A DNA stretch of 64,000 bases, taken from the NCBI GenBank assembly GCA_965240325.2, contig OZ251238.1, forward strand, positions 1-64,000, written 5' to 3'. Below the pieces are notes generated by a model that did not search any database, was not told the origin of the DNA, and worked only from the letters and a program-made list of their open reading frames with translations. This stretch comes from Rebecca billardiae RCC1528. Lineage: Eukaryota > Protista > Haptophyta. The position numbers and the translations under genes are program-made. Position 1 is the stretch's first letter. The number at the start of each line of letters is the position of its first letter. Positions 19,183 to 64,000 of the stretch are shown in pieces.

Positions 19183-19294
19183 CCCAGTGTGGGGCCGCCG
19201 AGGGCGCTCGCGAGGTGGGCGCCGGTCGCTCCGGGAGTTGAGAGGCTGGAGCAGACGAGCAGTCCGGCGCCTTTCTGGCCGAGGCAACCTCTTC

Positions 19295-31621: not shown

Positions 31622-31656
<35 letters not shown>

Positions 31657-32594: not shown

Positions 32595-33102
32595 TGGGCG
32601 CGAGCCGCCGCCGGAGGAATCCTCCTCGCGATGGGCCGATGGCCGGCACCGCAAACAAAAAAAAGCCGCGCGCCCGCCGTGGTTCTCGAGCGAATTTCTC
32701 GCTGCTGGCCTCCGTTGCAGACCGTTCCCGCGGTTCCCGTTTAGGCCGCCACTCGCGTCGACGACCTGTCGCCGTCGGGACCGGTCGTCCCGGCGTGCAG
32801 CCTGCCGTCGCACTCGCGAAGCTCCGAGTACTCGGGCGGCGGACTGCCCTGCTCGACTCTAGTGCGCCATGCATGGACTTGCCGGAGCGTTTCAGACTGA
32901 TTGACGCGGCTGCCGAACGGCTATGATTTTCATCATATTTGACCCCGTGGCCGTCACCCCGCCCGCCCCGGGCCCCCCTCCCCCACGGTGTGAGTGTCCG
33001 TCGTCGCGAGGCCGCCTCCGCCAGTCCGCGGATCCGACTGCCAGCGCGGCGGTCCAGGCGGTGGTCGGCCTCGCCGGGCGTCAGTACTGCGCTCAGTGGC
33101 CA

Positions 33103-34590
33103 TCAGTACCAGTTCTGCACGTAGGGCGCGTTGTCGCAGCCGCGCGTGCTGGGCTCGCGGAAGGGGAACATGTGCAGCCAGAAGTTGGCCCCGTACTTGA
33201 CGGCCCCCTCGCCCTCGCCCTCCACCGGCAGCGCCTCGTGGTCGGTCCGCTCGTCGCGGCTCCACGGGTCCTCGTCCAGCACGCTCGGCCAGAGCAGCGC
33301 GCGGCCCTTCTTGGGCGCGACGGTGAGGTTGAGCTTGGGGAAGCGCGTGCCGCCCCCCGCGGCCACGTCCGAGAGGTACATGTACACCGTGTACAGCCGA
33401 GGGCCCCACGCGGACGCGCGCGGCGAGTTCTGGTCCTGCGCGCACACACGCACACAAGCAGACGCGCAGACGCGCAGACGCCGGAGGGGGCGGTGGGCGA
33501 GGCGGGCGGCGGCGGCGCGGTGGCGACGCGGCGCCGCCGGCGCGCGCGCGCGCGCGCCGGCGTGCTTGCCCCTTGCGCGCACGTGGTGTGTGCGGTAGAA
33601 CTGCCCGCGCGTGTACTGCAGCAGCTGCAGCCACTCGCCATGCTCGGCAGGCACGTCCGTGAGGGCGCTCACGCGCGCCTGCACCGCGCCGACGGTCGCG
33701 TCGCCCAGGCACGCGCCCGTGCACCAGGCGGTGGACGAGGTGCGCACCTCCTGCTCGCCGTCGCCCGCGAGCGAGCGCGTCCACCCGCGCCCGCCCGCGC
33801 GCAGCAGCGCGTCCGCCTCCGCGCCGCTCAGGAAGTCGTCGATGGCCACCAGCCACGGCGAGCTGCAGAGCACGCGCGCGCTGCCGTTGCGCGCGGCGCC
33901 GAGCGCGCGCGACGAGGCGATGCGCTTGAACATCGCGTTCACCGACCCCTTCACCGCCGCCGGGCGCGCGTCGCGCGAGCGCGCGCACTTGGGCTCGGAG
34001 CGCGCGGCGCACGAGACGCACGTCCACGCGCACTGCGCGCGCATGCGCTCGCCGTCAGAGTAGCAGCCGCCGTCGGCAGCGCGCGCGGCGCAGTCGGGCG
34101 CGACGTCGTGGCACGCGTCGGACTGGCACAGCCGGCACGCCACGCGGCACTGCGCGTGCATGAACTTTGGGTTCGTCCCGCACTCGCCGATCGACGCCCA
34201 GGTGGCGCACATGCGGTGCAGGTCGGAGCACGTGCGCCGCTCGGCCGCGGCGCGCTCCTCGGCCGTGGGCGTGCACTCGCCGCACGCGGCGCGGCACGCG
34301 GTGCGCATGTACGACGGGTTCGCCTCGCACTCGCCGCTCGCCGCCCACGCCGCGCAGTCGCCGCTCTGGTCGGCGCACGTCGGCGCGGCCGCGGCGGGCG
34401 CGGCCGAGGCCGCGCCCGCCGCGCCCGCGGCCGGCTCGGCGGCGGGCGCGCGCGGCGAGCTGTCGGCGATCGGCTCGTGCGCGGGGGCCGACGTCGGCCC
34501 GACGCTCACGCGCACCGTCTGCCCCGGCGCCGCGTGCGCTCCGAGCAGCTGCGCGAGGAGCGCGCAGCAGACGCCGAGTCGGGGCGCCAT
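33103..34590 (-). CDS. P4H: Secretory prolyl 4-hydroxylase with three N-terminal ShK (ShKT) domains; exons 34590-33583 and 33435-33103
   Basis: Signal peptide; three 6-Cys ShK repeats (e.g. CADQSGDCAAWAASGECEANPSYMRTACRAACGEC); P4Hc motifs DDFLS, RTSSTAW, EWLQLLQYTRGQFYRTHH|D, YLSDVAAGGGTRFP, TDHEALPV and KYGANFW. Intron at 33582-33436. Confidence 0.93.
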   Translation of the reverse strand: MAPRLGVCCALLAQLLGAHAAPGQTVRVSVGPTSAPAHEPIADSSPRAPAAEPAAGAAGAASAAPAAAAPTCADQSGDCAAWAASGECEANPSYMRTACRAACGECTPTAEERAAAERRTCSDLHRMCATWASIGECGTNPKFMHAQCRVACRLCQSDACHDVAPDCAARAADGGCYSDGERMRAQCAWTCVSCAARSEPKCARSRDARPAAVKGSVNAMFKRIASSRALGAARNGSARVLCSSPWLVAIDDFLSGAEADALLRAGGRGWTRSLAGDGEQEVRTSSTAWCTGACLGDATVGAVQARVSALTDVPAEHGEWLQLLQYTRGQFYRTHHVRARGKHAGARARAPAAPRRHRAAAARLAHRPLRRLRVCASACVRVCAQDQNSPRASAWGPRLYTVYMYLSDVAAGGGTRFPKLNLTVAPKKGRALLWPSVLDEDPWSRDERTDHEALPVEGEGEGAVKYGANFWLHMFPFREPSTRGCDNAPYVQNWY

Positions 34591-35427
34591 GGTTGGGCGA
34601 GCGAACGGGCGGCGTGAGCTGATTGGCGCACCGAGCACGATTCCGAATACAAAATGAGCGCGGCGGTTGCCGTGTCGTCGGCCAATGAATCGACGACGAC
34701 GAGCTGCCCGCTCTACTTGCGAGTATACAGCAACAAGTCGTAGCGCGATGAATCGTAACCGTAACAGGTACTCGAACTGATGAATACACTCGCACGGCGG
34801 CGTGCGCGCGCGAGGCGCAGCGCGCTCGGGTGCTCGGCGCACTGCGGCGGTGGCCGCGCTGGCTGGCCTGGGCGCCTTTGACGGCGCGGTGCGCGCGCTT
34901 AGCTGCACGAGCGGGGCGGTGGTCCGCGACGCGGCGCCGGGCCCGAACGGTCCGGGCTTAATTTTGGCCGTCGCCCAGCAGCGTTATGACATGACACCCC
35001 GTCCCCGGCACTTCTGGCTCGCGTAAGCGGCAGCGGGCAGTGCAGGGCGTTGGGCGTGTGCGGCTTAGGCACGCGCCTCGTCAACCTCGCCGCATGGGCG
35101 GCCTCGCGGGCGACGCGCCGCCCGCGCCCTTCCGTGCTGGCCGCGCGCCGTGCCACGGTCAGTTGCGGCCCCACTCCTGGCACTCCGGCCGCGCAGCCTC
35201 GGGCGGTCTACTCTTTCAGTCTTTGCGGAGCGGCCTTGGGGTGGCTCGGGGGGCGTGGCCTATCCATGCGCCTGAACCGTCGCGCGCTCGATGGGTGGTG
35301 GGCTCGCCGGCCACAGCAACGTCGTCGGGCTGACCGAGTCGTCGCGAGAGAGTTGCTCGCCTGATTGGCTTGGCCGGTCGGGCGGCAGCTTGCTGCTTGC
35401 GGAATATGTCCGCGTGGCGCGCACTGG

Positions 35428-37683
35428 ATGCGCGAACGGTCGCCATCGTCGACGGCCGCCGCCGGGCCGACGACTCGACGCGCGACGGCGACAGCGCGGA
35501 GCGGGTGGCGGCGCGCCGAGGCCGCGCCGCCGCGCCGCGCCACGCCGCGCCGCGCCCTCGCCCTCGCCGCGTGCTGCTGCTGCTGCTGCGCTGGCCCCAC
35601 GCCGCTCGGCGGCGCCGCGGCGGCGGCGGCCGCGGCCGCGGCCGACGCTTCCGCCGGCGGCGCGCCACGCTTCCGCGGCGGCGACCTGGAGGACCCCGCG
35701 GTGTTCCGCGAGCTGCTCGCGTGGGCGGTGGAGGGCGAGCTCGTCCTGCTCACGACGAACGGGCCGGGCCTCCCCGACGCCGTGCACGCCGCGCTGCAGC
35801 TGCGCGCGCTCGGCGTGGCGCACGTGCTCGCGCACGGCGCCTCGCCCGCCGCGTGCGCCGCGTACACGGCGGCGCTGCCGGCGCACGGCGCGTGCGTCAC
35901 GTCGTCGTGGGCGCCGCGCGGCGCGGGCGGCGGCGCGTGGCGCCCGCGCAACTTCCGCTCGGCGCTCTTCATCGCGCGCAAGCACGCGCTGTACGTGCTG
36001 TGCGCGCGCGGCGGGCTGGGCGTGCTGCAGGCGGACAGCGACACGCTCTGGCTGGCGCACCCGCTCGCGCTCTTCCGCGCGCCCGCGCTGCGCAAGTACG
36101 ACGTGATCGTGCAGAAGGACGTGCCGTACGCCAACGCGGGCGTGCTGTACGTGCGCAACGCGCGCAACGGCACCGGCGCCGCGTGGGTGCTGGCCGAGCT
36201 CGTCGCGACGCTCGCGGAGCTCGGCGGCGACGCGGCGGGCGCGCTCGCGGCCGCGCGCGCGGTCGTGCCCTCGGCGGCTGCGCTGGTGGACAAGCTGGAG
36301 AACGAGCAGATGGTGCTGAACGACGTGCTCGCGTCCGCCGTGCTGCGCCGCCGCGAGTGGGCCTTCTCCGTGCAGCGCGCGTACGCCAGCGCGCCGGGCG
36401 CGCCCGGCTCGCTGCGCGCGGCGCAGGCGCGCGCCGCGGCCGCGCAGGCGCTGGCCATGCGCGCCGCCATGCGCGCGGTCGCACTCGACACGCGCGGCGC
36501 GGCGGGCGCGGGGCCGGCGGTGCTCGGGCTGGGCACGTGCGCGCACCGCTGGGCCAAGCTGGGCCTCGAGGCGCGGCTCTGGCCGCTCGACGCGCCCGCG
36601 GGCCGCGCCGTCGCCTCGTGGGCCCTGCTGGCGCCGCCCTCGCTGCTCGCGCACCTGCGCCAGTACGCGGCGATGGCGCACGGCTGCGCGCACACGCGCT
36701 GCTCCGCGCTCACGCGCGCCGGGGCGGGGGCGGGCGCGCGCGCCGCGCCGGTGGTGACGGCGGTGGTGCACCTCGCCTCGCTCTCCGCCGCGCGGCACAT
36801 GCGGCCCGTCATGCTGCAGGCGCTGGGCAGCTGGGACGCGCGCGCGGACGGCGCGGCGGGCGCGCTGGCCGCGGCTCGGTTTGGGCGCGCCAGCCGCGCG
36901 CTCACGCTCGCCGGCTTCGACCTGGGCGAGGCGCTGGACGCGCGGAACGAGAGCGCGATCACCGAGGCGGTGGTCGCGCCGCTCGTGCGCCTCGCGCTCG
37001 CCGCGCGCCGCCGGCCCGCGCTGCCGCCGCTGCCGTGCCCCGCGCGGCCGTGGAGCGCGCGCGAGGCGGCCCGGCGCGCGCTGGTGGCGGACTCGGACTG
37101 CGAGCCCGCGCGCGCGCTGCCCGGCGACGCGTCCGGCCGGGGCGCGGCGCACGGCGAGTGCGGCTGGCTCGGCGACGCGCCGTGCCAGAGGATCGCGCTC
37201 TCGCGCTTCGAGACCGACCGGCTGCGCGCGCTGCTCAGCGCGCCCGCGCCCCCGCCGGCCGAGGGCGCGCCAGCCGGGGCCGGGGCGGGGTCGGGCGTCG
37301 CGTCCGCGCCCGCGCCCGCGCCCGCGTCTGTCGCTGTGGTGCGGCTGCAAGCGCTGCTCGGCGGAGGCGGCGCGCAGCAGCCGGCGGGGGTCGAGGCGGA
37401 GGGGCTCGCCGAGCGCGTGGCCGCGCTGCTCGGCGCGGCCGCGCAGCCCGCCGCGCTCGTCGTGCTCGACGGCGGCGGCGCGCCCGTGCGGCTGCTGCGC
37501 GAGGCGGTGGCAGCGCTCGCGGCCGAGCAGCACTCATCGCAGCAGCGGCCCTCGCGCCACACGGCCGCGCCGCGCCCGCGCGGCCGGCCGCGCGCGCTGC
37601 TCGGCGGCATGGGCCATGCCGACGAGCCGCTCGGCGCCACGTGCAAGCGCGCGCAGCGCGAGATGCCGCAGCTGCTGGTCTGA
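35428..37683 (+). CDS. Nucleotide-diphospho-sugar transferase (GT77 / Nucleotid_trans-like), type II membrane glycosyltransferase
   Basis: Basic N-terminus plus a hydrophobic anchor. Motifs ARK..L, GLGVLQADSDTLWLAHP (DxD), YDVIVQKD, ANAGVLYVR and NEQMVLNDVL are typical of GT77. Confidence 0.8.
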   Translation: MRERSPSSTAAAGPTTRRATATARSGWRRAEAAPPRRATPRRALALAACCCCCCAGPTPLGGAAAAAAAAAADASAGGAPRFRGGDLEDPAVFRELLAWAVEGELVLLTTNGPGLPDAVHAALQLRALGVAHVLAHGASPAACAAYTAALPAHGACVTSSWAPRGAGGGAWRPRNFRSALFIARKHALYVLCARGGLGVLQADSDTLWLAHPLALFRAPALRKYDVIVQKDVPYANAGVLYVRNARNGTGAAWVLAELVATLAELGGDAAGALAAARAVVPSAAALVDKLENEQMVLNDVLASAVLRRREWAFSVQRAYASAPGAPGSLRAAQARAAAAQALAMRAAMRAVALDTRGAAGAGPAVLGLGTCAHRWAKLGLEARLWPLDAPAGRAVASWALLAPPSLLAHLRQYAAMAHGCAHTRCSALTRAGAGAGARAAPVVTAVVHLASLSAARHMRPVMLQALGSWDARADGAAGALAAARFGRASRALTLAGFDLGEALDARNESAITEAVVAPLVRLALAARRRPALPPLPCPARPWSAREAARRALVADSDCEPARALPGDASGRGAAHGECGWLGDAPCQRIALSRFETDRLRALLSAPAPPPAEGAPAGAGAGSGVASAPAPAPASVAVVRLQALLGGGGAQQPAGVEAEGLAERVAALLGAAAQPAALVVLDGGGAPVRLLREAVAALAAEQHSSQQRPSRHTAAPRPRGRPRALLGGMGHADEPLGATCKRAQREMPQLLV

Positions 37684-38031
37684 TTCGCGCCGCCGACGGC
37701 CCGGCCGGGGCGGGCGGGCGTGTCGCCCCGAGTTGGGCGACACGCCGGCCGGGGCGGTTTCAAGTCCGGGGCGGCCAACCACGAAAAGCCGTGCCAAAAA
37801 AAGCCTCATGAGTGCTTCCGCAGCGGCCGAACTATCGCGCGGGTACACGCATGGCGTGATTGGTATTGGGCACTATCATACTGTACATATCGGCACGGAG
37901 CTGCTTGGAGGTGCGGTGCGCCGGCTCCAGCTGCTCATGGTCGTTTTGCACCGGGGCGAGAGAGGCCGAGCCGCACCCGCCACCTGCCACAACCGCGCCG
38001 TGTGTGGGTGTGGCAAGCCGCCATCGCCATC

Positions 38032-59000: not shown

Positions 59001-62000
59001 CCCTCCCCGCCGCCCTCGCCGCCGCCGAGCCCGCCTCCGTCTCCACCGCCATCGCCGCCACCGGCAGCCTCGCCGCTGCCACCACCGTCGCCGCCGCCAT
59101 CGCCGCCGCCGAGCCCGCCGCCATCACCACCGCCTTCGCCGCCGCCCTCCCCGCCGCCCTCGCCGCCGCCGAGCCCGCCTCCGTCGCCACCGCCATCGCC
59201 GCCACCGGCAGCCTCGCCGCTTCCACCACCGTCCCCGCCGCCGTCGCCGCCGCCGAGCCCGCCGCCATCACCACCGCCTTCGCCTCCTCCGAGCCCACCG
59301 CCGCCAGTCCCACCGCCCTCGCCGCCCCCTAGCCCTCCGCCCAGCCCGCCGCCGTCGCCACCGCCGGCACCGCCACCGCCACCGAGGGCGCAGCCCTTCC
59401 CACCGCCGAGCCCACCTGCGCCGCCGCCCAGCCCTCCGCCGAGCCCGCCGCCGCAGCCGCCGCCGAGCCCGCCCCCGGTGTCACCTCCGCTGCCACCGCC
59501 CTCGCCACCGCCCAGCCCACCGCCGCCGGCGCCGCCGCCGTCCCCTCCTCCACAGCCGCCGCCGAGCCCGCCACCGACGCAGCCGCCGTCCCCGCCACCC
59601 TCGCCGCCACCTTCGCCGCCGCCCAGCCCGCCTCCGACGCCACCGCCATCGCCACCACCGTCGCCGCCACCGGCAGCCTCGCCGCTGCCACCACCGTCTC
59701 CGCCGCCGTCGCCGCCGCCGAGCCCGCCGCCATCACCACCGCCTTCGCCGCCGCCCTCTCCGCCGCCCTCGCCGCCGCCGAGCCCGCCTCCATCGCCACC
59801 GCCGTCGCCGCCACCGGCAGCCTCGCCGCTGCCACCGCCGTCGCCGCCGCCATCGCCGCCGCCGAGCCAGCCGCCATCACCACCGCCTTCGCCGCCGCCC
59901 TCTCCGCCGCCCTCGCCGCCGCCGAGCCCGCCTCCGTCGCCACCGCCATCGCCGCCACCGGCAGCCTCGCCGCTGCCACCGCCGTCCCCGCCGCCGTCGC
60001 CGCCGCCGAGCCCGCCGCCATCACCACCGCCTTCGCCTCCTCCGAGCCCACCGCCGCCAGTCCCACCGCCCTCGCCGCCCCCTAGCCCTCCGCCCAGCCC
60101 GCCGCCGTCGCCACCGCCGGCACCGCCACCGCCACCGAGGGCGCAGCCCTTCCCACCGCCGAGCCCACCTGCGCCGCCGCCCAGCCCTCCGCCGAGCCCG
60201 CCGCCGCAGCCGCCGCCGAGCCCGCCCCCGGCGTCACCTCCGCTGCCACCGCCCTCGCCACCGCCGAGCCCACCGCCGCCGGCGCCGCCGCCGTCCCCTC
60301 CTCCACAGCCGCCGCCGAGCCCGCCACCGACGCAGCCGCCGTCCCCGCCACCGTCGCCGCCACCTTCGCCGCCGCCCAGCCCGCCTCCGACGCCACCGCC
60401 ATCGCCACCACCGTCGCCGCCACCGGCAGCCTCGCCGCTGCCACCACCGTCTCCGCCGCCGTCGCCGCCGCCGAGCCCGCCGCCATCACCACCGCCTTCC
60501 CCGCCGCCCTCTCCGCCGCCCTCGCCGCCGCCGAGCCCGCCTCCGTCGCCACCGCCATCGCCGCCACCGGCAGCCTCGCCGCTGCCACCGCCGTCCCCGC
60601 CGCCGTCGCCGCCGCCGAGCCCGCCGCCATCACCACCGCCTTCGCCTCCTCCGAGCCCACCGCCGCCAGTCCCACCGCCCTCGCCGCCCCCTAGCCCTCC
60701 GCCCAGCCCGCCGCCGTCGCCACCGCCGGCACCGCCACCGCCACCGAGGGCGCAGCCCTTCCCACCGCCGAGCCCACCTGCGCCGCCGCCCAGCCCTCCG
60801 CCGAGCCCGCCGCCGCAGCCGCCGCCGAGCCCGCCCCCGGCGTTACCTCCGCTGCCACCGCCCTCGCCACCGCCGAGCCCACCGCCGCCGGCGCCGCCGC
60901 CGTCCCCTCCTCCACAGCCGCCGCCGAGCCCGCCTCCGTCGCCGCCGCCATCGCCACCACCGTCGCCGCCACCGGCAGCCTCGCCGCTGCCACCACCGTC
61001 TCCCCCGCCATCGCCGCCGCCGAGCCCGCCGCCATCACCAGCGCCCTCGCCGCCGCCCTCGCCGCCGCCCTTGCCGCCGCCGAGCCCGCCTCCGTCGCCA
61101 CCGCCGTCGCCGCCACCGGCAGCCTCGCCGCTGCCACCGCCGTCCCCGCCACCATCGCCGCCGCCAAGCCCGCCGCCATCACCACCGCCCTCGCCGCCGC
61201 CCTCTCGGCCGCCCTCTCCGCCGCCGAGCCCGCCTCCGTCGCCACCGCCATCGCCGCCACCGGCAGCCTCGCCGCTTCCACCACCGTCCCCGCCGCCGTC
61301 GCCGCCGCCGAGCCCGCCGCCATCACCACCGCCTTCGCCTCCTCCGAGCCCACCGCCGCCAGTCCCACCGCCCTCGCCGCCCCCTAGCCCTCCGCCCAGC
61401 CCGCCGCCGTCGCCACCGCCGGCACCGCCACCGCCACCGAGGGCGCAGCCCTTCCCACCGCCGAGCCCACCTGCGCCGCCGCCCAGCCCTCCGCCGAGCC
61501 CGCCGCCGCAGCCGCCGCCGAGCCCGCCCCCGGCGTCACCTCCGCTGCCACCGCCCTCGCCACCGCCCAGCCCACCGCCGCCGGCGCCGCCGCCGTCCCC
61601 TCCTCCACAGCCGCCGCCGAGCCCGCCACCGACGCAGCCGCCGTCCCCGCCACCCTCGCCGCCACCTTCGCCGCCGCCCAGCCCGCCTCCGACGCCACCG
61701 CCATCGCCACCACCGTCGCCGCCACCGGCAGCCTCGCCGCTGCCACCACCGTCTCCGCCGCCGTCGCCGCCGCCGAGCCCGCCGCCATCACCACCGCCTT
61801 CCCCGCCGCCCTCTCCGCCGCCCTCGCCGCCGCCGAGCCCGCCTCCGTCGCCACCGCCGTCGCCGCCACCGGCAGCCTCGCCGCTGCCACCGCCGTCGCC
61901 GCCGCCATCGCCGCCGCCGAGCCAGCCGCCATCACCACCGCCTTCGCCGCCGCCCTCTCCGCCGCCCTCGCCGCCGCCGAGCCCGCCTCCGTCGCAACCG

Positions 62001-64000
62001 CCATCGCCGGCACCGGCAGCCTCGCCGCTGCCACCGCCGTCCCCGCCGCCATCGCCGCCGCCGAGCCCGCCGCCATCACCACCGCCTTCGCCGCCGCCCT
62101 CTCCGCTGCCCAGCCCGCCTCCGTCGCCACCGCCGTCGCCGCCACCGGCAGCCTCGCCGCTGCCACCACCGTCGCCGCCGCCATCGCCGCCGCCGAGCCC
62201 GCCGCCATCACCACCGCCTTCGCCGCCGCCCTCGCCGCCGCCCTCGCCGCCGCCGAGCCCGCCTCCGTCGCCACCGCCGTCGCCGCCACCGGCGGCCTCG
62301 CCGCTGCCACCACCGTCGCCGCCGCCATCGCCGCCGCCGAGCCCGCCGCCATCACCACCGCCTTCGCCGCCGCCCTCCCCGCCGCCCTCGCCGCCGCCGA
62401 GCCCGCCTCCGTCGCCACCGCCATCGCCGCCACCGGCAGCCTCGCCGCTGCCACCGCCGTCCCCGCCGCCGTCGCCGCCGCCGAGCCCGCCGCCATCACC
62501 ACCGCCTTCGCCTCCTCCGAGCCCACCGCCGCCAGTCCCACCGCCCTCGCCGCCCCCTAGCCCTCCGCCCAGCCCGCCGCCGTCGCCACCGCCGGCACCG
62601 CCACCGCCACCGAGGGCGCAGCCCTTCCCACCGCCGAGCCCACCTGCGCCGCCGCCCAGCCCTCCGCCGAGCCCGCCGCCGCAGCCGCCGCCGAGCCCGC
62701 CCCCGGCGTCACCTCCGCTGCCACCGCCCTCGCCACCGCCGAGCCCACCGCCGCCGGCGCCGCCGCCGTCCCCTCCTCCACAGCCGCCGCCGAGCCCGCC
62801 ACCGACGCAGCCGCCGTCCCCGCCACCCTCGCCGCCACCTTCGCCGCCGCCCAGCCCGCCTCCGACGCCACCGCCATCGCCACCACCGTCGCCGCCACCG
62901 GCAGCCTCGCCGCTGCCACCACCGTCTCCGCCGCCGTCGCCGCCGCCGAGCCCGCCGCCATCACCACCGCCCTCGCCGCCGCCCTCCCCGCCGCCCTCGC
63001 CGCCGCCGAGCCCGCCTCCGTCGCCACCGCCGTCGCCGCCACCGGCAGCCTCGCCGCTGCCACCACCGTCGCCGCCGCCATCGCCGCCGCCGAGCCCGCC
63101 GCCATCACCACCGCCTTCGCCGCCGCCCTCCCCGCCGCCCTCGCCGCCGCCGAGCCCGCCTCCGTCGCCACCGCCATCGCCGCCACCGGCAGCCTCGCCG
63201 CTGCCACCGCCGTCCCCGCCGCCGTCGCCGCCGCCGAGCCCGCCGCCATCACCACCGCCTTCGCCGCCGCCCTCCCCGCCGCCCTCGCCGCCGCCGAGCC
63301 CGCCTCCGTCGCCACCACCATCGCCGCCACCGGCAGCCTCGCCGCTTCCACCACCGTCGCCGCCGCCATCGCCGCCGCCGAGCCCGCCTCCGTCGCCACC
63401 GCCATCGCCGCCACCGGCAGCCTCGCCGCTGCCACCACCGTCCCCGCCGCCATCGCCGCCGCCGAGCCAGCCGCCATCACCACCGCCTTCGCCGCCGCCC
63501 TCTCCGCCGCCGAGCCCGCCTCCGTCGCCACCGCCGTCGCCGCCACCGGCAGCCTCGCCGCTGCCACCGCCGTCCCCGCCACCATCGCCGCCGCCAAGCC
63601 CGCCGCCATCACCACCGCCCTCGCCGCCGCCCTCTCGGCCGCCCTCTCCGCCGCCGAGCCCGCCTCCGTCGCCACCGCCATCGCCGCCACCGGCAGCCTC
63701 GCCGCTTCCACCACCGTCCCCGCCGCCGTCGCCGCCGCCGAGCCCGCCGCCATCACCACCGCCTTCGCCTCCTCCGAGCCCACCGCCGCCAGTCCCACCG
63801 CCCTCGCCGCCCCCTAGCCCTCCGCCCAGCCCGCCGCCGTCGCCACCGCCGGCACCGCCACCGCCACCGAGGGCGCAGCCCTTCCCACCGCCGAGCCCAC
63901 CTGCGCCGCCGCCCAGCCCTCCGCCGAGCCCGCCGCCGCAGCCGCCGCCGAGCCCGCCCCCGGCGTTACCTCCGCTGCCACCGCCCTCGCCACCGCCGAG
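38032..64000 (+). CDS. Giant extensin/HRGP-like Ser-Pro glycoprotein with lectin-like, cohesin, Ig-like and dockerin-like domains (3'-incomplete)
   Basis: The frame from ATG 38032 (MELTLDEQ...) is stop-free through the Cys modules, the (SPPP)n tracts and a ~1,390-aa globular block. Two single-C insertions near 56356 and 56640 shift the frame, probably through sequencing error. No stop is reached before the window end, which explains its absence from the ORF track. Confidence 0.88.
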   Translation, partial: MELTLDEQRASRGAARRRGAADPRDGGNAAARALDAAAHPGEAWPRLIAPAAAPRSDAAACRRPHPTRHGGAADAARVGSPAQPERDKAASARAARPRSRPAPSARGSARWLPSALAAAALLLGCAPRAAAQSTATCTELRTLYGLSDSWQLSAAAGFERVCGESRHPWGTGFSSYEAITNWDICPASVWFVWQDANTACTDIGARLCTQAEVEADVAANGDGQCGTYDGTPWDQHRFWTSTQCGKNADNRRRVPGASAYAAEGAQCKNGVSGINNAGIKCCADEPAPPPSPPAPPPSPPSPPPSPPPSPAPPPSPPPSPAPPPSPPPSPPPSPPPSPPPSPPPSPPPQPPVPPPPVPPPSPPPGAPPGAPPSPPPSPPPSPPPSPPPSPPPPSPPPSPPPSPPPSPPPSPPSPPPSPPQATTSCATLQSLYGGWPLASDPGFALVCGESNNGLDGSGGSQCSGLRDHNSAIEFCQRVNARLCTYQELQADVAANTGCDLENARVWTNQACSNPAAPDVDNFWSVGGSNASTLPLRCRTWDKTYSVRCCADVLESPPPPLPPPSPPPTPPPSPPPSPPPPLPPPSPPPSPPPSPPPSPPPSPPPSPPPSPPPSPPPGSPPHPPPSPPPSPPPGSPPHPPPSPPPGQPPSPPPSPPPSPPPSPPPSPPPSPSPQPPPSPPPSPPPSPPPSPPPGQPPSPPPSPPPSPPPSPPPSPPPSPPPSPPPSPPPSPPPSPPPSPSPQPPPSPPPASPPSPPPSPPPSPPPPSPPPSPPPSPPPRPPPSPPPSPPPSPPPSPPPPAVEPSPPPSPPPQAPPSPPPSPPPSPPPGAPPGPPPSPPPTPPPPAPPPSPPPSPPPSPPPSPPPSPFPSPPPSPPPPGAPPTPPPSPPPAQPPRPPPSPPPSPPPSPPPSPPPSPPPSPPPSPPPTAAPSPPPSPPPSPPPSPPPSPPPPDPPPSPPPSPPPSPPPWQPPSPPPSPPPSPPPSPPPAASPLPPPSPPPRPPPSPPPSPPPSPPPSPPPSPPPSPPPSPPPAASPLPPPSPPPSSPPSPPPSPPPSPPPSPPPSPPPSPPPSPPPSPPPAASPLPPPSPPPSPPPSPPPSPPPSPPPSPPPPVPPLSPPPSPPPSPPPSPPPAPPPPPRAQPFPPPSPPAPPPSPPPSPPPVPPPSPPPASPPRPPPSPPPSPPPPVPPPSPPPQPPPSPPPTQPPSPPPSPPPSPPPSPPPSPPPSPPPSPPPAASPLPPPSPPPSLPPSPPPSPPPSPPPSPPPSPPPSPPPSPPPAASPLPPPFPPPSPPPSPPPSPPPSPPPSPPPPVPPPSPPPSPPPSPPPSPPPAPPPPPRAQPFPPPSPPAPPPSPPPSPPPVPPPSPPPASPPRPPPSPPPSPPPPVPPPSPPPQPPPSPPPTQPPSPPPSPPPSPPPSPPPSPPPSPPPSPPPAASPLPPPSPPPSPPPSPPPSPPPSPPPSPPPSPPPSPPPSPPPSPPPSPPPAASPLPPPSPPPSPPPSPPPSPPPSLPPSPPPSPPPSPPPSPPPSPPPSPPPSPPPSPPPSPPPAASPLPPPSPPPSPPPSPPPSPPFSPPPSPPPSPPPSPPPSPPPSPPPSPPPAASPLPPPSPPPSLPPSPPPSPPPSPPPSPPPSPPPSPPPSPPPAASPLPPPFPPPSPPPSPPPSPPPSPPPSPPPPVPPPSPPPSPPPSPPPSPPPAPPPPPRAQPFPPPSPPAPPPSPPPSPPPQPPPSPPPASPPLPPPSPPPSPPPPVPPPSPPPQPPPSPPPTQPPSPPPSPPPSPPPSPPPSPPPSPPTSPPPAASPLPPPSPPPSPPPSPPPSPPPSPPPSPPPSPPPSPPPSPPPSPPPSPPPAASPLPPPSPPPSPPPSPPPSPPPSPPPSPPPPVPPPSPPPSPPPSPPPSPPPAPPPPPRAQPFPPPSPPAPPPSPPPSPPPQPPPSPPPASPPLPPPSPPPSPPPPVPPPSPPPQPPPSPPPTQPPSPPPSPPPSPPPSPPPSPPPSPPPAASPLPPPSPPPSPPPSPPPSPPPSPPPSPPPSPPPSPPPSPPPSPPPSPPPAASPLPPPSPPPSPPPSPPPSPPPSPPPSPPPPVPPPSPPPSPPPSPPPSPPPAPPPPPRAQPFPPPSPPAPPPSPPPSPPPQPPPSPPPASPPRPPPSPPPSPPPPVPPPSPPPQPPPSPPPTQPPSPPPSPPPSPPPSPPPSPPPSPPPSPPPAASPLPPPSPPPSPPPSPPPSPPPSPPPSPPPSPPPSPPPSPPPAASPLPPPSPPPSPPPSPPPSLPPSPPPSPPPSPPPSPPPSQPPAASPLPPPSPPPSPPPSPSPLPPPSPPPSPPPSPPPSPPPSPLPSPPPSPPPSPPPAASPLPPPSPPPSPPPSPPPSPPPSPPPSPVPSPPPSPPPSPPPSPPPSPPPSPPPSPPPSPPPSPPPASPLPPPSPPPSSPPSQPPSPPPLPPPSPPPSLPPSPPPHPPPSPPPSPPPSPPPSPPPSPPPASPLPPPSPPPSPPPSPSPLPPPSPPPSPPPSPPPSPPPSPLPSPPPSPPPSPPPAASPLPPPSSPPSPPPSPPPSPPPSPPPSPVPSPPPSPPPSPPPSPPPSPPPSPPPSPPPSPPPSPPPASPLPPPSPPPSSPPSQPPSPPPLPPPSPPPSLPPSPPPHPPPSPPPSPPPSPPPSPPPAPPPSPPPSPPPLPPPSPPPSPPPSPPPSPLPSPPPSPPPTLPPSPPPSPPPSPPPSPPPLPPPPRPPPSPPPSPPPSPPPSPPPSQPPQPPPSPPPSPPPSSPPAPPPPRPPPSPPPSLPPSPPPSPPPSAPPAPPPSPPPSPPPAPQPPSPPPSPPPSPPPSPPPSPLPPLPPPSPPSPPPPRTLPFPPPSPPSPPLPPFAFGADALVSDAQITLYTTSSSPGAAVHGTVSSAGNRHNLTVGFLAGASAGASGTVRAASHGIDLGVASSYSVTAEQAASVECAVRTPTAYADRTGVRVAYQLRDAAHRSSVLTTGLSVSLTLSLVGGSDQSFSCGSPGATTGVGECSATVSAGWFSTAAAGSVDVLVEFNYGGGTVGSCSRAGAVTLAESPTAYTLPSVGLLGQMAQSPVFAGDSFELVMYAHTGGVALITWQINIAYDSSVLSVASTSVASTYNSPEVSDNAAGLVSIIATGLTGGTTNAQVTGTAVELITLTMSVAGGASAGSYAGAISVEIEQYVNDATQVYVSEQAGVVADADDGASASGTLVVETVAVQGWLAYVASGELVNTAPLSGTDVTTALSVLELYSRAATSSATQSSGYSCLALDSSVLSTSAGSPCTVVASSSSTSGAATALVNVTRDSSGAVVASVPLRVWHPLSAEIRFGHGTLFAIKGASQPGQCGTQAFQSTTASLVASFGGSDLSTVSDVDVTREATLASGDAGVASISTSSTTGVATVAGVGVGSAAISASGSSPSISSTIVVSADVERRIASLRPVAFNSIAFVDSPSTLSVGATSGFDASAALGQTLTAEGQTVSVYTYAYLGDGSYELVPSTEVTLTSRTSSLTVAAPGDASSPWTATVATFATSQEGLLLDASWIDSCSAVLATGRARVDLELPNAVSVAVSASADEVTVPGDPAAEPPTSLPTSLTVTITVTFEDESQVDFTTDPRTNITLSVPSSCATFDGVNQVTMTSGATCTALNVTVFVDSYLLSGFVEVPVVTAAGASFEITLEDDTLGLIGASATFQRTATTPSATLSDGTVVSPTLLAAEMVLASNDTLVATTSGSTVIGVGAGVALINATWGTLTASATVYVDATAVKVTALTLGLGGLTSGASLLASNGTSSTLSALVTLEDGVQYTNLMSLGYVSVSEVLSFESDDAAVLGVDPNGGVTIAGNSRDSANTITATSLDAGAVADALDVTANLQPGTHDVDLGSASGLQLQQSGNSLTVPVRVNTGGSSEYLVNFQIELAIDSAVLVATSCSTLSWAECTINDPLNEVRFVGNTASQITSGTAASIGSVTFDVLSSASTSLTGSIVELVTVQGATETRVQNADIFAGAGGLTTTVSRRRALALAAEYVPPLFVPTEPSRAARARRLAECSGCSAAIVGDVNGDCALTSFDVRVLSQFVIGVSGLTTCTSALDPTLDNSTGAQDVQYQLRAVAGKYRFLTSYSITSGAIGVGTSEPLVASVVVTKDDNTVADDSQTSVFFEIGVAAASHTPVYVNGTDNGTSAEGFWVGRGEYTNGVFSVGVYPSGGWPQALSGSLGVAVMIETTDALGNGADDRKFPFLGSSAQFYADFLYTFSPLLSTAVIGPPLPPPPLPPPSPPPPAPPPSPPPPAPPPTPPPLPPPTPPPSPPPSPPPSPPPLPPVPPPSPPPLPPPSPPPSPPPSPPPAPAPPPSPPPTPPPSPPPRPAPPPSPPPAPPPSPPPSQPPSPPPSPPPSPPPSPPPSQPPSPPPSPPPSPPPAPSPLPPPSPPPRPPPSPPPSPPPSPPPSPPPSPPPSPPPSPPPSPPPSPPPAPRPPPSPPPSPPPSPPPSPPPSPPPSPPPSPPPSPPPAASPLPPPSPPPSPPPSPPPSPPPSPPPSPPPSRPPSPPPSPPPSPPPNPPPSPPPSPPPSPPPSPPPSPPPSPPPAASPLPPPSPPPSPPPSPPPSPPPSPPPSPPPSPPPSPPPSPPPSPPPAASPLPPPSPPPSPPPSPPPSPPPSPPPSPPPSPPPSPPPSPPPSPPPSPPPSPPPSPPPAASPLPPPSPPPSPPPNQPPSPPPSPPPSPPPSPPPSPPPSPPPAASPLPPPSPPPSPPPSQPPSPPPSPPPSPPPSPPPSPPPSPPPAASPLPPPLPPPSPPPSPPPSPPPSPPPAASPLPPPSPPPSPPPSPPPSPPPSPPPSPPPSPPPSPPPSPPPAASPLPPPSPPPSPPPSQPPSPPPSPPPSPPPSPPPSPPPSPPPAASPLPPPSPPPSPPPSPPPSPPPSPPPSPPPSPPPSPPPAASPLPPPSPPPSPPPSPPPSPPPSPPPSPPPSPPPSPPPSPPPAASPLPPPSPPPSPPPSPPPSPPPSPPPSPPPSPPPSPPPSPPPSPPPAASPLPPPSPPPSPPPSPPPSPPPSPPPSPPPSPPPSPPPSPPPSPPPAASPLPPPSPPPSPPPSPPPSPPPSPPPSPPPPVPPPSPPPSPPPSPPPSPPPAPPPPPRAQPFPPPSPPAPPPSPPPSPPPQPPPSPPPVSPPLPPPSPPPSPPPPAPPPSPPPQPPPSPPPTQPPSPPPSPPPSPPPSPPPTPPPSPPPSPPPAASPLPPPSPPPSPPPSPPPSPPPSPPPSPPPSLPPSPPPSPPPSPPPAASPLPPPSPPPSPPPSPPPSPPPSPPPSPPPSPPPSPPPSPPPSPPPAASPLPPPSPPPSPPPSPPPSPPPSPPPAASPLPPPSPPPSPPPSQPPSPPPSPPPSPPPSPPPSPPDSPPPAASPLPPPSPPPSPPPSPPPSPPPSPPPSPPPSPPPSPPPSPPPSPPPAASPLPPPSPPPSPPPSPPPSPPPSPPPSPPPPVPPPSPPPSPPPSPPPSPPPAPPPPPRAQPFPPPSPPAPPPSPPPSPPPQPPPSPPPVSPPLPPPSPPPSPPPPAPPPSPPPQPPPSPPPTQPPSPPPSPPPSPPPSPPPTPPPSPPPSPPPAASPLPPPSPPPSPPPSPPPSPPPSPPPSPPPSPPPSPPPSPPPSPPPAASPLPPPSPPPSPPPSPPPSPPPSSPPSRPPSPPPSPPPSPPPSPPPAASPLPPPSPPPSPPPSPPPSPPPSPPPSPPPSPPPSPPPSPPPSPPPAASPLPPPSPPPSPPPSPPPSPPPSPPPSPPPPVPPPSPPPSPPPSPPPSPPPAPPPPPRAQPFPPPSPPAPPPSPPPSPPPQPPPSPPPALPPLPPPSPPPSPPPPAPPPSPPPQPPPSPPPSPPPSPPPSPPPAASPLPPPSPPPSPPPSPPPSPPPSPPPSPPPSPPPSPPPSPPPSPPPAASPLPPPSPPPSPPPSPPPSPPPSPPPSPPPPVTPPSPPPSPPPSPPPWPPPAPPPPPRAQPFPPPSPPAPPPSPPPSPPPQPPPSPPPVSPPLPPPSPPPSPPPPAPPPSPPPQPPPSPPPTQPPSPPPSPPPSPPPSPPPTPPPSPPPSPPPAASPLPPPSPPPSPPPSPPPSPPPSPPPSPAALAAAEPASVATAIAATGSLAASTTVAAAIAAAEPAAITTALVAALSAALAAAEPASVATAIAATGSLTAATAVPAAVAAAEPAAITTAFAAAPPRRPRRRRARLRRHRRRRHRQPRRCHRRPRRRRRRRARRHHHRLRLLRAHRRQSHRPRRPLALRPARRRHHRRHRHRHRGRSPSHRRAHLRRRPALRRARRRSRRRARPRRYLRCHRPRHRRAHRRRRRRRPLLHSRRRARLRRRRHRHHRRRHRQPRRCHHRLRRRRRRRARRHHHRLRRRPPRRPRRRRARLRRHRRRRHRQSRRCHRRRRRHRRRRARRHHHRLRRRPPRRPRRRRARLRRHRRRRHRQPRRCHRRHRRRRARRHHHRLRRRPLRRRARLRRHRRRRHRQPRRCHHRRRRHRRRRARRHHHRLRRRPPRRPRRRRARLRLHRHRRHRQPRRCHHRRRRHRRRRARRHHHRLRRRPPRRPRRRRARLRRHRRRRHRQPRRFHHRPRRRRRRRARRHHHRLRLLRAHRRQSHRPRRPLALRPARRRRHRRHRHRHRGRSPSHRRAHLRRRPALRRARRRSRRRARPRCHLRCHRPRHRPAHRRRRRRRPLLHSRRRARHRRSRRPRHPRRHLRRRPARLRRHRHRHHRRRHRQPRRCHHRLRRRRRRRARRHHHRLRRRPLRRPRRRRARLRRHRRRRHRQPRRCHRRRRRHRRRRARRHHHRLRRRPPRRPRCRRARLRRHRRRRHRQPRRCHRRRRRHRRRRARRHHHRLRRRPPRRPRRRRARLRRHHHRRHRQPRRFHHRRRRHRRRRARLRRHRHRRHRQPRRCHHRPRRHRRRRASRHHHRLRRRPLRRRARLRRHRRRRHRQPRRCHHRRRRHRRRRARRHHHRLRRRPPRRPRRRRARLRLHRHRRHRQPRRCHHRRRRHRRRRARRHHHRLRRRPPRRPRRRRARLRRHRHRRHRQPRRFHHRPRRRRRRRARRHHHRLRLLRAHRRQSHRPRRPLALRPARRRRHRRHRHRHRGRSPSHRRAHLRRRPALRRARRRSRRRARPRCHLRCHRPRHRPAHRRRRRRRPLLHSRRRARHRRSRRPRHPRRHLRRRPARLRRHRHRHHRRRHRQPRRCHHRLRRRRRRRARRHHHRLRRRPLRRPRRRRARLHRHRRRRHRQPRRCHRRRRRHRRRRASRHHHRLRRRPLRRPRRRRARLRRHRHRRHRQPRRCHRRPRRRRRRRARRHHHRLRLLRAHRRQSHRPRRPLALRPARRRRHRRHRHRHRGRSPSHRRAHLRRRPALRRARRRSRRRARPRRHLRCHRPRHRRAHRRRRRRRPLLHSRRRARHRRSRRPRHRRRHLRRRPARLRRHRHRHHRRRHRQPRRCHHRLRRRRRRRARRHHHRLPRRPLRRPRRRRARLRRHRHRRHRQPRRCHRRPRRRRRRRARRHHHRLRLLRAHRRQSHRPRRPLALRPARRRRHRRHRHRHRGRSPSHRRAHLRRRPALRRARRRSRRRARPRRYLRCHRPRHRRAHRRRRRRRPLLHSRRRARLRRRRHRHHRRRHRQPRRCHHRLPRHRRRRARRHHQRPRRRPRRRPCRRRARLRRHRRRRHRQPRRCHRRPRHHRRRQARRHHHRPRRRPLGRPLRRRARLRRHRHRRHRQPRRFHHRPRRRRRRRARRHHHRLRLLRAHRRQSHRPRRPLALRPARRRRHRRHRHRHRGRSPSHRRAHLRRRPALRRARRRSRRRARPRRHLRCHRPRHRPAHRRRRRRRPLLHSRRRARHRRSRRPRHPRRHLRRRPARLRRHRHRHHRRRHRQPRRCHHRLRRRRRRRARRHHHRLPRRPLRRPRRRRARLRRHRRRRHRQPRRCHRRRRRHRRRRASRHHHRLRRRPLRRPRRRRARLRRNRHRRHRQPRRCHRRPRRHRRRRARRHHHRLRRRPLRCPARLRRHRRRRHRQPRRCHHRRRRHRRRRARRHHHRLRRRPRRRPRRRRARLRRHRRRRHRRPRRCHHRRRRHRRRRARRHHHRLRRRPPRRPRRRRARLRRHRHRRHRQPRRCHRRPRRRRRRRARRHHHRLRLLRAHRRQSHRPRRPLALRPARRRRHRRHRHRHRGRSPSHRRAHLRRRPALRRARRRSRRRARPRRHLRCHRPRHRRAHRRRRRRRPLLHSRRRARHRRSRRPRHPRRHLRRRPARLRRHRHRHHRRRHRQPRRCHHRLRRRRRRRARRHHHRPRRRPPRRPRRRRARLRRHRRRRHRQPRRCHHRRRRHRRRRARRHHHRLRRRPPRRPRRRRARLRRHRHRRHRQPRRCHRRPRRRRRRRARRHHHRLRRRPPRRPRRRRARLRRHHHRRHRQPRRFHHRRRRHRRRRARLRRHRHRRHRQPRRCHHRPRRHRRRRASRHHHRLRRRPLRRRARLRRHRRRRHRQPRRCHRRPRHHRRRQARRHHHRPRRRPLGRPLRRRARLRRHRHRRHRQPRRFHHRPRRRRRRRARRHHHRLRLLRAHRRQSHRPRRPLALRPARRRRHRRHRHRHRGRSPSHRRAHLRRRPALRRARRRSRRRARPRRYLRCHRPRHRR
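38425..38883 (+). other. Cys-rich C-type-lectin-fold-like module 1 of the giant protein
   Basis: TCTEL..W...VCGES...ANTACTDIGARLCTQAEV...FWTSTQC...IKCCAD. Confidence 0.6.
39289..39684 (+). other. Cys-rich C-type-lectin-fold-like module 2 of the giant protein
   Basis: SCATL..W...VCGES...AIEFCQRVNARLCTYQEL...GCDLENARVWT...VRCCAD, a clear paralogue of module 1. Confidence 0.6.
39690..46625 (+). repeat. Coding Ser-Pro repeat tract (~2,300 codons)
   Basis: Near-continuous CCG/CCA/CCC plus TCG/AGC codons reading SPPP, with PPPAASPL and PPRAQPFPP sub-units. Confidence 0.95.
46630..50810 (+). other. Central globular block: TMEM132-like cohesin + Ig (Big_2-like) domains, second cohesin, dockerin-like domain
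   Basis: Beta-strand-rich sequence. Motifs PVFAGDSFELVMY..WQINIAYDSSVL, ELVNTAPLSG, LRVWHP..LFAIKG, LASNDTLVAT..GVGAG, GNSLTVPVRVN..FQIELAIDSAVL and GDVNGDCALTSFD. Confidence 0.72.
50815..64000 (+). repeat. Coding Ser-Pro repeat tract (>4,300 codons, continues beyond the window)
   Basis: Same SPPP / PPPAASPL / PPRAQPFPP units as the 39690-46625 tract. Confidence 0.95.

What the first reader, a model, noticed from the sequence alone, without database searches (positions are those of the whole stretch)
33103..64000. Enzyme-enzyme-substrate gene cluster: prolyl 4-hydroxylase + GT77 glycosyltransferase + giant (SPPP)n protein
Seen: three adjacent genes. P4H and GT77 are head-to-head across ~840 bp, and the Ser-Pro giant starts 348 bp after the GT77 stop. 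Established: extensin maturation requires P4H to form hydroxyproline and then arabinosylation, in which the GT77 members RRA1-3 and XEG113 act in plants. Inference: this is an operon-like eukaryotic biosynthetic cluster for one surface glycoprotein in a lineage that appears not to be a green plant. Chance adjacency is possible, since both enzyme families can be large in algae.
Basis: partly seen in the sequence, partly recalled or inferred. Interest (0 to 1): 0.85.

Follow-up and report, generated by a model that had tools for sequence, protein, structure and literature searches.

The report
Hydroxylase, glycosyltransferase and giant proline-rod neighbours
Near a chromosome end of a very GC-rich haptophyte alga, a prolyl 4-hydroxylase gene, a GT77-family glycosyltransferase gene and a giant Ser-Pro-Pro-Pro rod protein gene do lie side by side, but related algae keep the two enzyme genes apart, so a dedicated gene cluster is not shown.

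Summary
The P4H gene runs 34590->33103 on the minus strand, with three ShK domains, a catalytic domain and one verified 147-nt intron. It lies head-to-head, 834 bp away, with a secretory glycosyltransferase gene (35425-37683). A reading frame of at least 8,600 codons starts 348 bp after that gene's stop and holds about 1,170 SPPP units.

The "GT77" label is only indirectly supported. The direct Pfam hit is below threshold, but the orthologue and 56 of 73 homologues are PF03407, the DxD motif is invariant, and the fold is retaining GT-A. Its subclade (RRA, XEG113 or other) could not be determined.

The lineage is a pavlovophyte-like haptophyte, not a green plant.

The "operon-like cluster" reading is not supported:
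- In Diacronema lutheri the two enzyme orthologues lie on different contigs.
- In D. lutheri and a second relative the transferase keeps FKBP/SNARE neighbours.
- No homologue locus examined (Prymnesium, Emiliania, environmental contigs) pairs the enzymes or carries an SPPP rod.
- No sequencing runs were listed, so co-expression is untested.

SPPP giants are very common in this genome. The scan noted three other enzyme-beside-SPPP-gene loci in the same genome, so a genome-wide permutation test is the decisive step.

The giant's frame has two +1 shifts at C-runs near 56.35 and 56.64 kb.

The parts
33103..34590 (-). Prolyl 4-hydroxylase gene. Exon 1 is 34590-33583, the intron is 33582-33436 (147 nt), exon 2 is 33435-33103. 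The spliced product is 446 aa: signal peptide, three ShK domains and a 2OG-Fe(II) catalytic domain with H-H-D, a distal His (DHEALPV) and Lys (VKYGANFW).
   Evidence: Pfam; PDB sequence search; homologues 73% (P0001), 62% (D. lutheri) and 50% (P. parvum) identical; intron verified by alignment.
34591..35424 (.). Divergent (head-to-head) spacer of 834 bp between the P4H and GT start codons; GC 0.69.
   Evidence: Sequence. It shares no k-mers with the giant's upstream spacer beyond shuffles.
35425..37683 (+). Secretory glycosyltransferase of the Nucleotid_trans (PF03407, CAZy GT77) family, 752 aa. It has a weak N-terminal hydrophobic or signal segment, a GT-A catalytic domain with DSD (DxD), and a conserved C-terminal extension.
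   Evidence: Pfam direct hit sub-threshold. Exhaustive HMMER search found 112 homologues, best 46% identical. 56 of 73 homologues match PF03407, and D145/D147 are invariant. AF2 model pLDDT 78, pTM 0.83. Foldseek top hits are Gat1 (6mw5) and glycogenins. ESM Atlas PF03407 clusters: TM 0.55 by shape, 0.96-0.97 by features.
37684..38031 (.). 348-bp spacer between the GT stop and the giant's first ATG.
   Evidence: Sequence.
38032..38886 (+). Giant gene N-terminus: about 110 basic or Ala-rich residues, a hydrophobic segment (38362-38424, WLPSALAAAALLLGCAPRAAA), and then Cys-rich globular domain 1.
   Evidence: Translation. No Pfam or PDB sequence match. ESM Atlas gives only haptophyte hypothetical clusters, plus weak leads to DUF7495 and Lcl_C.
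38884..39300 (+). Short (SPPP)n linker of about 139 aa.
39301..39690 (+). Cys-rich globular domain 2, which I read by eye in the translation as a second copy of domain 1; the two were not aligned.
   Evidence: Translation.
39691..46590 (+). Rod 1: 2,300 aa, 70% Pro and 20% Ser, 387 SPPP units, no Tyr, Cys or Lys.
46591..50814 (+). Central non-repeat block of about 1,400 aa, rich in Ser, Ala, Val, Thr and Gly, with a TMEM132-type Ig domain at about 47707-48000.
   Evidence: Composition; Pfam PF16070 E 2.6e-09.
50815..56353 (+). Rod 2, first part, in the same frame as the start codon: 1,839 aa, 320 SPPP units.
56354..56647 (+). Zone with two +1 frame shifts. Each is one extra C, at 56350-56358 and at 56639-56647, in two copies of a roughly 140-nt repeat unit.
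   Evidence: Sequence; frame tracking.
56625..64000 (+). Rod 2, continued in the third frame: at least 2,458 aa and 426 SPPP units. It runs off the window end, so the C-terminus is unknown.

Best explanation
These are three real, adjacent secretory-pathway genes, 33 kb and more from a telomere of a pavlovophyte-like haptophyte.

The genes.
- The P4H is a member of a P4H orthogroup conserved across haptophytes.
- The transferase is a divergent, haptophyte-type member of the GT77 (Nucleotid_trans) family.
- The giant is one of this genome's many giant head-on-rod proteins. Its (SPPP)n rods are the kind of sequence that plant and algal P4Hs hydroxylate and that arabinosyl- or galactosyltransferases then coat.

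Likely mechanism (inferred, not shown). In the ER and Golgi the P4H converts rod prolines to hydroxyproline. Hyp-glycosyltransferases, possibly including this GT77-family enzyme, then build short glycans that stiffen the polyproline-II rod.

How I read the adjacency. The two enzymes most probably serve all such rods in the cell, not just the neighbouring gene. The side-by-side layout is a lineage-specific, derived arrangement. It may be fortuitous, or it may reflect local co-regulation. It is not a conserved operon-like unit.
For: Gene identities.

Secretory targeting: the P4H has a signal peptide. GT orthologues start with signal peptides followed by the conserved 'PRF.GGDLE'.

Enzymes are conserved orthologues with other neighbours elsewhere:
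- D. lutheri P4H lies between a kinase and aspartate-semialdehyde dehydrogenase on contig 8.
- D. lutheri GT lies next to FKBP, SNARE and, further on, GT47 on contig 4.
- The FKBP/SNARE context recurs in a second relative.
- P. parvum, E. huxleyi and environmental loci show no pairing and no rod.

Rod genes are very numerous in this genome: 93 'extensin' and 19 'SPPP' scan notes.

The pathway logic (P4H, then HPAT, then GT77 RRA/XEG113, then GT47 ExAD) comes from PMC5371791. Hyp-glycan-coated SPPP helices in algae come from PMC11015965.
Against: A specific P4H + GT77 + rod triple is a priori unlikely by chance. My rough estimate is well under 1 expected per genome, but it uses guessed family sizes.

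The scan's unchecked notes list three more loci in this genome where a Hyp-pathway enzyme sits beside an SPPP gene. That hints at real enrichment.

Synteny between this genome and D. lutheri is eroded in general: no shared neighbours at all. Loss of adjacency there is therefore only moderate evidence.

No expression data could be obtained.
Confidence: 0.6

Rival explanations
1. It is a genuine, recently assembled enzyme-enzyme-substrate module. The P4H and GT share a bidirectional promoter and are co-regulated with the downstream giant, and selection keeps the enzymes next to a very demanding substrate gene.
For: Tight spacing and head-to-head layout. All three products enter the secretory pathway. 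The GT has left its conserved FKBP/SNARE context and now sits between a P4H and a rod gene. Three other enzyme-beside-SPPP loci are noted in the same genome. The triple has a low a-priori chance.
Against: The adjacency is not conserved in any relative examined. The two promoter regions share no motif beyond shuffles. Both enzymes are single conserved orthologues that must also serve the many other rod genes. Intergenic distances of 0.2-0.8 kb are simply the norm in this window. Expression is untested.
Confidence: 0.2
2. It is pure coincidence with no shared pathway for the transferase. The GT77-family enzyme works on another acceptor, such as a polysaccharide or a scale or mucilage glycan, and only the P4H-rod relation is meaningful.
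For: Known GT77 activities are diverse: RG-II xylosyltransferase, Skp1 alpha-galactosyltransferase and Hyp-arabinoside extension (PMC5371791, and general knowledge). This protein is so divergent that it misses the Pfam threshold. Its close relatives are all uncharacterised haptophyte or environmental proteins. Another GT77 domain in this genome sits in a sulfotransferase/fucosyltransferase megaprotein.
Against: Family-level homology to the only known Hyp-arabinoside-extending enzymes, and secretory location. Chlorophyte homologues of similar length exist (Chlamydomonas eustigma, Tetraselmis), and chlorophytes do make Hyp-arabinosides.
Confidence: 0.2

Closest known systems
Plant and green-algal extensin/HRGP maturation pathway: P4H, then HPAT (GT95), then RRA1-3 and XEG113 (GT77), then ExAD (GT47-E)
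   Same: It has the same enzyme families (collagen/plant-type P4H with ShK/Tox1-type domains; PF03407/GT77), the same Ser-Pro3-4 substrate motif, and secretory location.
   Different: I know of no clustering of these genes in plants (general knowledge, not checked here). Here the GT is a divergent haptophyte clade not shown to be RRA or XEG113. The rods have no Tyr cross-linking motifs and are thousands of residues long. The lineage is a haptophyte.
Chlamydomonas fibrous HRGPs: mastigoneme protein MST1 (PMC11015965) and, from my own knowledge, the sexual agglutinins
   Same: Globular heads on long hydroxylated, glycosylated polyproline-II shafts containing SPPP(P) motifs; extracellular filaments.
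   Different: The rods here are far longer (at least 6,800 rod residues in the window). The head domains are different and uncatalogued. No biochemical data exist.
Cytoplasmic Skp1 hydroxyproline glycosylation pathway of Dictyostelium, Toxoplasma and Pythium (PhyA P4H plus GTs including GT77 AgtA or the GT8-like Gat1)
   Same: A prolyl hydroxylase works with retaining GT-A transferases on a Hyp-linked glycan. Gat1 (6mw5) is the top structural match of the GT model.
   Different: Those enzymes are cytoplasmic and act on one proline of Skp1. Both enzymes here carry secretory signals, and the P4H is of the collagen/plant type with ShK domains.
Eukaryotic metabolic gene clusters (plant and fungal specialised metabolism)
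   Same: Physical adjacency of non-homologous genes that could act in one pathway.
   Different: Those clusters are defined by co-expression and often by conservation, and they encode enzymes for small molecules. Here neither conservation nor co-expression is shown, and one member would be the protein substrate itself.

Membership tests
Collagen/plant-type prolyl 4-hydroxylase (PF13640 catalytic domain with ShK domains) | 2OG-Fe(II) double-stranded beta-helix catalytic domain homologous to known P4Hs | tested here: met
   Pfam 2OG-FeII_Oxy_3 35.1 bits, above the cut-off of 27. PDB hits are B. anthracis P4H, human C-P4H alpha-2 and Chlamydomonas P4H-1.
Collagen/plant-type prolyl 4-hydroxylase (PF13640 catalytic domain with ShK domains) | Fe(II) triad His-x-Asp...His and the 2OG-binding Lys | tested here: met
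   After splicing, the residues are THH-D, DHEALPV and VKYGANFW. They sit in columns conserved with D. lutheri, P. parvum and diatom homologues.
Collagen/plant-type prolyl 4-hydroxylase (PF13640 catalytic domain with ShK domains) | Hydroxylation of (SPPP)n peptides | not testable with these tools
   Needs an enzyme assay.
CAZy GT77 / Pfam PF03407 Nucleotid_trans | Significant match to the family profile | tested here: inconclusive
   Direct hit E 0.031, 14.7 bits, below the cut-off of 22. However, 56 of 73 homologues match PF03407, and so does the D. lutheri orthologue.
CAZy GT77 / Pfam PF03407 Nucleotid_trans | GT-A fold with a DxD metal and nucleotide-sugar motif | tested here: met
   D145 and D147 are invariant in 73 sequences. 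The AF2 model has pLDDT 78. Foldseek top hits are retaining GT-A enzymes: Gat1, glycogenin and LgtC. An ESM Atlas PF03407 cluster matches with TM 0.55 over 453 residues.
GT77 clades RRA (A) or XEG113 (Hyp-arabinoside beta-arabinosyltransferases) | Phylogenetic grouping with RRA1-3 or XEG113 rather than RGXT, RAY1 or AgtA | not tested
   No named reference sequences could be obtained. Word-indexed searches were swamped by low-complexity candidates. Named relatives are only hypothetical proteins of haptophytes and chlorophytes.
Extensin sensu stricto | Repeated Ser-Pro(3-5) motifs | tested here: met
   About 1,166 SPPP units. Pro-runs of length 3 dominate and are preceded by Ser in about 80% of cases.
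Extensin sensu stricto | Tyr-based cross-linking motifs (YXY, VYK) | tested here: not met
   There is no Tyr or Lys in about 6,800 rod residues.
Eukaryotic functional gene cluster | Adjacency conserved in related genomes | tested here: not met
   D. lutheri orthologues lie on different contigs. No pairing or rod was seen in P. parvum, E. huxleyi or environmental loci.
Eukaryotic functional gene cluster | Co-expression of the members | not testable with these tools
   No sequencing run was listed for the locus.
Eukaryotic functional gene cluster | Adjacency exceeding chance, given family sizes | not tested
   Only this window of the genome was available. The scan notes indicate many rod genes and three other enzyme-rod adjacencies.

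The most novel reading that the evidence does not exclude
In this pavlovophyte, genes for hydroxyproline-glycan maturation enzymes (P4H, GT77, HPAT, GT47) have repeatedly been brought next to the giant (SPPP)n rod genes they serve. That would make several lineage-specific enzyme-plus-protein-substrate neighbourhoods, of which this subtelomeric P4H<->GT77->giant triple is one. I know of no described eukaryotic gene cluster that includes its own protein substrate.
Probability: 0.15. Interest if true: 0.7.

Novelty: new member of a known kind. Interest (0 to 1): 0.4.

Why it matters
The locus shows that a haptophyte carries a plant-like hydroxyproline-glycoprotein toolkit (ShK-type P4H, GT77-family transferase) together with enormous SPPP rods. 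This bears on how old Hyp-glycan chemistry is outside green plants, and on what the surface or flagellar hairs of these algae are made of.

If enzyme-substrate clustering proved non-random genome-wide, it would be an unusual form of eukaryotic genome organisation. It would also give a shortcut for assigning functions to uncharacterised algal glycosyltransferases.

As it stands, the adjacency alone is a hypothesis generator. It is not evidence of a dedicated unit.

Tried and rejected
- Word-indexed homologue searches for the GT returned nothing useful, once with the single sequence and once with the profile. The 8,000 candidate slots filled with Ala-rich low-complexity proteins. The exhaustive HMMER search was what worked.
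- Single-sequence AF2 of the GT failed (pLDDT 38). The alignment-based model succeeded.
- A profile search of PDB sequences found no GT relative.
- The first metagenome scan attempt failed for lack of conserved columns. The second gave only seven loci, mostly short.
- The look-up of sequencing runs listed no run, so read laying was never run. Neither expression nor the two frame shifts could be checked against reads.
- A search for shared promoter k-mers between the two intergenic regions found nothing above shuffles.
- The search of earlier findings by sequence was blank, which means nothing.
- I considered that the window kinase downstream of the P4H might match the kinase upstream of the D. 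lutheri P4H, which would be partial synteny. tblastn shows only a 27-residue generic kinase match, so I rejected this.
- I considered that the minus-strand ORFs at 47832-50384 might be a separate gene splitting the giant in two. I rejected this because the plus frame is continuous and carries the Pfam Ig hit.
- The telomeric TTAGGG-type repeat (1-1630) resembles the human telomere. I read it only and sent none of it to any search tool.

Full report
**Setting**

The window starts with about 1.6 kb of CCCTAA telomeric repeat. A 194-bp satellite of 59 copies follows at 2060-13562. Genes then follow in DNA of 70-80% GC.

The best named relatives of the encoded proteins are the haptophytes Diacronema lutheri and Prymnesium parvum.

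Other genes between the satellite and the finding are a sulfatase (17023-20823, minus), a sterol-sensing-domain fragment (25107-26384, minus) and a protein kinase (30453-32858, minus).

**The prolyl 4-hydroxylase**

The minus-strand ORF from ATG 34590 to the stop at 33103 has three ShK domains and a 2OG-FeII_Oxy_3 domain. It matches solved P4Hs from Bacillus anthracis, human C-P4H alpha-2 and Chlamydomonas P4H-1.

The continuous ORF hides an in-frame 147-nt intron (33582..33436, GTGCG donor). Homologues lack exactly these 49 residues. Removing them restores the conserved 'THHDQNSPRASAWGPR', which holds the Asp of the His-x-Asp iron motif.

The spliced 446-aa protein is 73% identical to an unnamed JGI sequence (P0001). 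It is 62% identical to the D. lutheri protein KFE25_002102 and 50% identical to a P. parvum protein. It therefore belongs to an orthogroup conserved across haptophytes.

**The transferase**

The plus-strand ORF 35425-37683 (752 aa) gives only a sub-threshold Pfam hit to Nucleotid_trans/PF03407: E 0.031, over the DxD region. Two word-indexed searches failed.

An exhaustive HMMER search found 112 homologues, and three were full-length at 40-46% identity. Of 73 aligned homologues, 56 match PF03407, and the two Asp of 'DSD' are invariant. The D. lutheri orthologue carries a precomputed PF03407 hit.

An alignment-based AlphaFold model reached pLDDT 78 and pTM 0.83. Its best PDB matches are retaining GT-A enzymes: the Skp1 glycan alpha-galactosyltransferase Gat1 (6mw5), then glycogenins and LgtC. 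Its best ESM Atlas matches are about 700-aa PF03407 clusters from Chlorophyta and Haptophyta.

Orthologues begin with signal peptides followed by the conserved 'PRF.GGDLE', so the enzyme is secretory.

My conclusion is that it is a divergent member of the GT77 family. I could not test whether it groups with the Hyp-arabinoside extenders RRA or XEG113, because no reference sequences were obtainable.

**The giant**

One frame is open from 37684 to the window end. The first ATG, at 38032, is exactly 348 bp after the GT stop. The parts, in order, are:
- about 110 residues, then a hydrophobic segment;
- a Cys-rich domain, a 139-aa SPPP linker, and what I read by eye as a second copy of the Cys-rich domain;
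- a 2,300-aa rod;
- a roughly 1,400-aa non-repeat block with a TMEM132-type Ig hit;
- a second rod that runs off the window.

The rods are about 70% Pro and 20% Ser. They hold about 1,166 SPPP units and no Tyr, Cys or Lys. They have the extensin repeat but lack extensin cross-linking motifs.

The Pro frame is unbroken for 17.4 kb. It then shifts by +1 twice within 300 nt, each time at one extra C in two copies of a roughly 140-nt unit (56350-56358 and 56639-56647). After that it runs unbroken for another 7.4 kb. Homopolymer assembly errors are the simplest reading, but I could not check reads.

**Is it a cluster?**

The layout is as described: the spacers are 834 bp (head-to-head) and 348 bp. 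Conservation is absent.

- In D. lutheri the P4H orthologue sits between a kinase and aspartate-semialdehyde dehydrogenase on contig JAGTXO010000008.
- The D. lutheri GT orthologue sits on JAGTXO010000004. A chromodomain ORF lies upstream and FKBP, SNARE, a thioesterase and a GT47 lie downstream.
- The FKBP/SNARE neighbours recur beside the GT orthologue of a second relative. None of these neighbours is in the window. The window's arrangement is therefore derived.
- P. parvum, E. huxleyi and environmental loci of GT homologues carry no P4H and no SPPP rod within the flanks held, which reach 5-10 kb on each side. This was checked by tblastn and by scanning all frames.
- The P4H homologue loci that I could scan as DNA (D. 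lutheri, P. parvum) carry no GT77 gene and no rod. Two further P4H loci were judged from their called genes only.
- The two promoter regions share nothing beyond shuffles.
- No sequencing run was listed.

**Chance**

The scan's unchecked notes show that SPPP/extensin-like giants are extremely common in this genome: 93 and 19 notes. That raises the chance of any gene lying beside one.

A specific P4H + GT77 + rod triple is still unlikely under my rough, assumption-laden arithmetic. Three further notes describe Hyp-pathway enzymes beside SPPP genes elsewhere in this genome (s1-365602, s1-363366, s1-346304). One follow-up, on s1-346304, also found no evidence of a dedicated unit. I therefore keep a 15-20% probability that enzyme-rod neighbourhoods are non-random here. 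That can only be settled with the whole genome.

**Verdict**

The gene identities are largely confirmed, though the GT77 subclade is unknown.

The functional link is plausible by analogy with the plant and Chlamydomonas pathways (PMC5371791; PMC11015965). The 'operon-like cluster for one glycoprotein' is not supported.

The most likely picture is two general HRGP-maturation enzymes that happen, in this lineage, to lie beside one of their many giant substrates.

The human-like telomeric repeat was read but not sent to any search tool.

Noticed in passing
window 1-1630 and 2060-13562: The chromosome end carries about 1.6 kb of CCCTAA (TTAGGG-type) telomere, followed by a 194-bp subtelomeric satellite of about 59 copies at 94% identity. 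The finding therefore lies 33 kb and more from a telomere.
   Followed up: partly
window 56350-56358 and 56639-56647: There are two single extra C's, about 290 nt apart, in two copies of a roughly 140-nt repeat unit. They move the Pro/Ser frame by +1 twice, after 17.4 kb in one frame and before 7.4 kb in another. They look like homopolymer assembly errors, but this is unverified.
   Followed up: partly
window 17023-20823 (-), 25107-26384 (-), 30453-32858 (-): Other genes in the window are a sulfatase (Pfam E 9e-41), a sterol-sensing/Patched-type domain fragment, and a protein kinase directly downstream of the P4H.
   Followed up: partly
L004:12142-13229 and L022:2917-3961: The GT77 orthologue keeps FKBP and SNARE-like neighbours in Diacronema lutheri and in a second pavlovophyte-like organism (Logan SRR30872635). 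The order and orientation of those neighbours differ between the two.
   Followed up: yes
L009:43-969 and L014:18120-19879: In two more distant, probably prymnesiophyte, homologue loci the GT lies near an RRM+WW-domain gene. This suggests a second, different conserved neighbourhood.
   Followed up: no
L004:16527-18233; L010:18386-19528: In D. lutheri a GT47 (exostosin) gene lies 4.4 kb from the GT77 orthologue. In P. parvum a GT31 Galactosyl_T gene lies 6.5 kb from the P4H homologue. Both families include Hyp-glycan enzymes in plants. This may be coincidence.
   Followed up: no
window 38428-38886 and 39301-39690: Two Cys-rich domains of about 130-150 aa, which look to me like copies of one another (not aligned), head the giant. 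They have no Pfam or PDB sequence match. ESM Atlas gives only haptophyte hypothetical clusters, plus weak leads to DUF7495 and Lcl_C (a C-type-lectin-like fold).
   Followed up: partly
window 33436-33582: The P4H intron is in frame and free of stops, so the gene reads as one continuous ORF and the intron is easily missed. Its donor is GTGCG, and it is CA-rich at the 5' end and GC-rich in the middle.
   Followed up: yes
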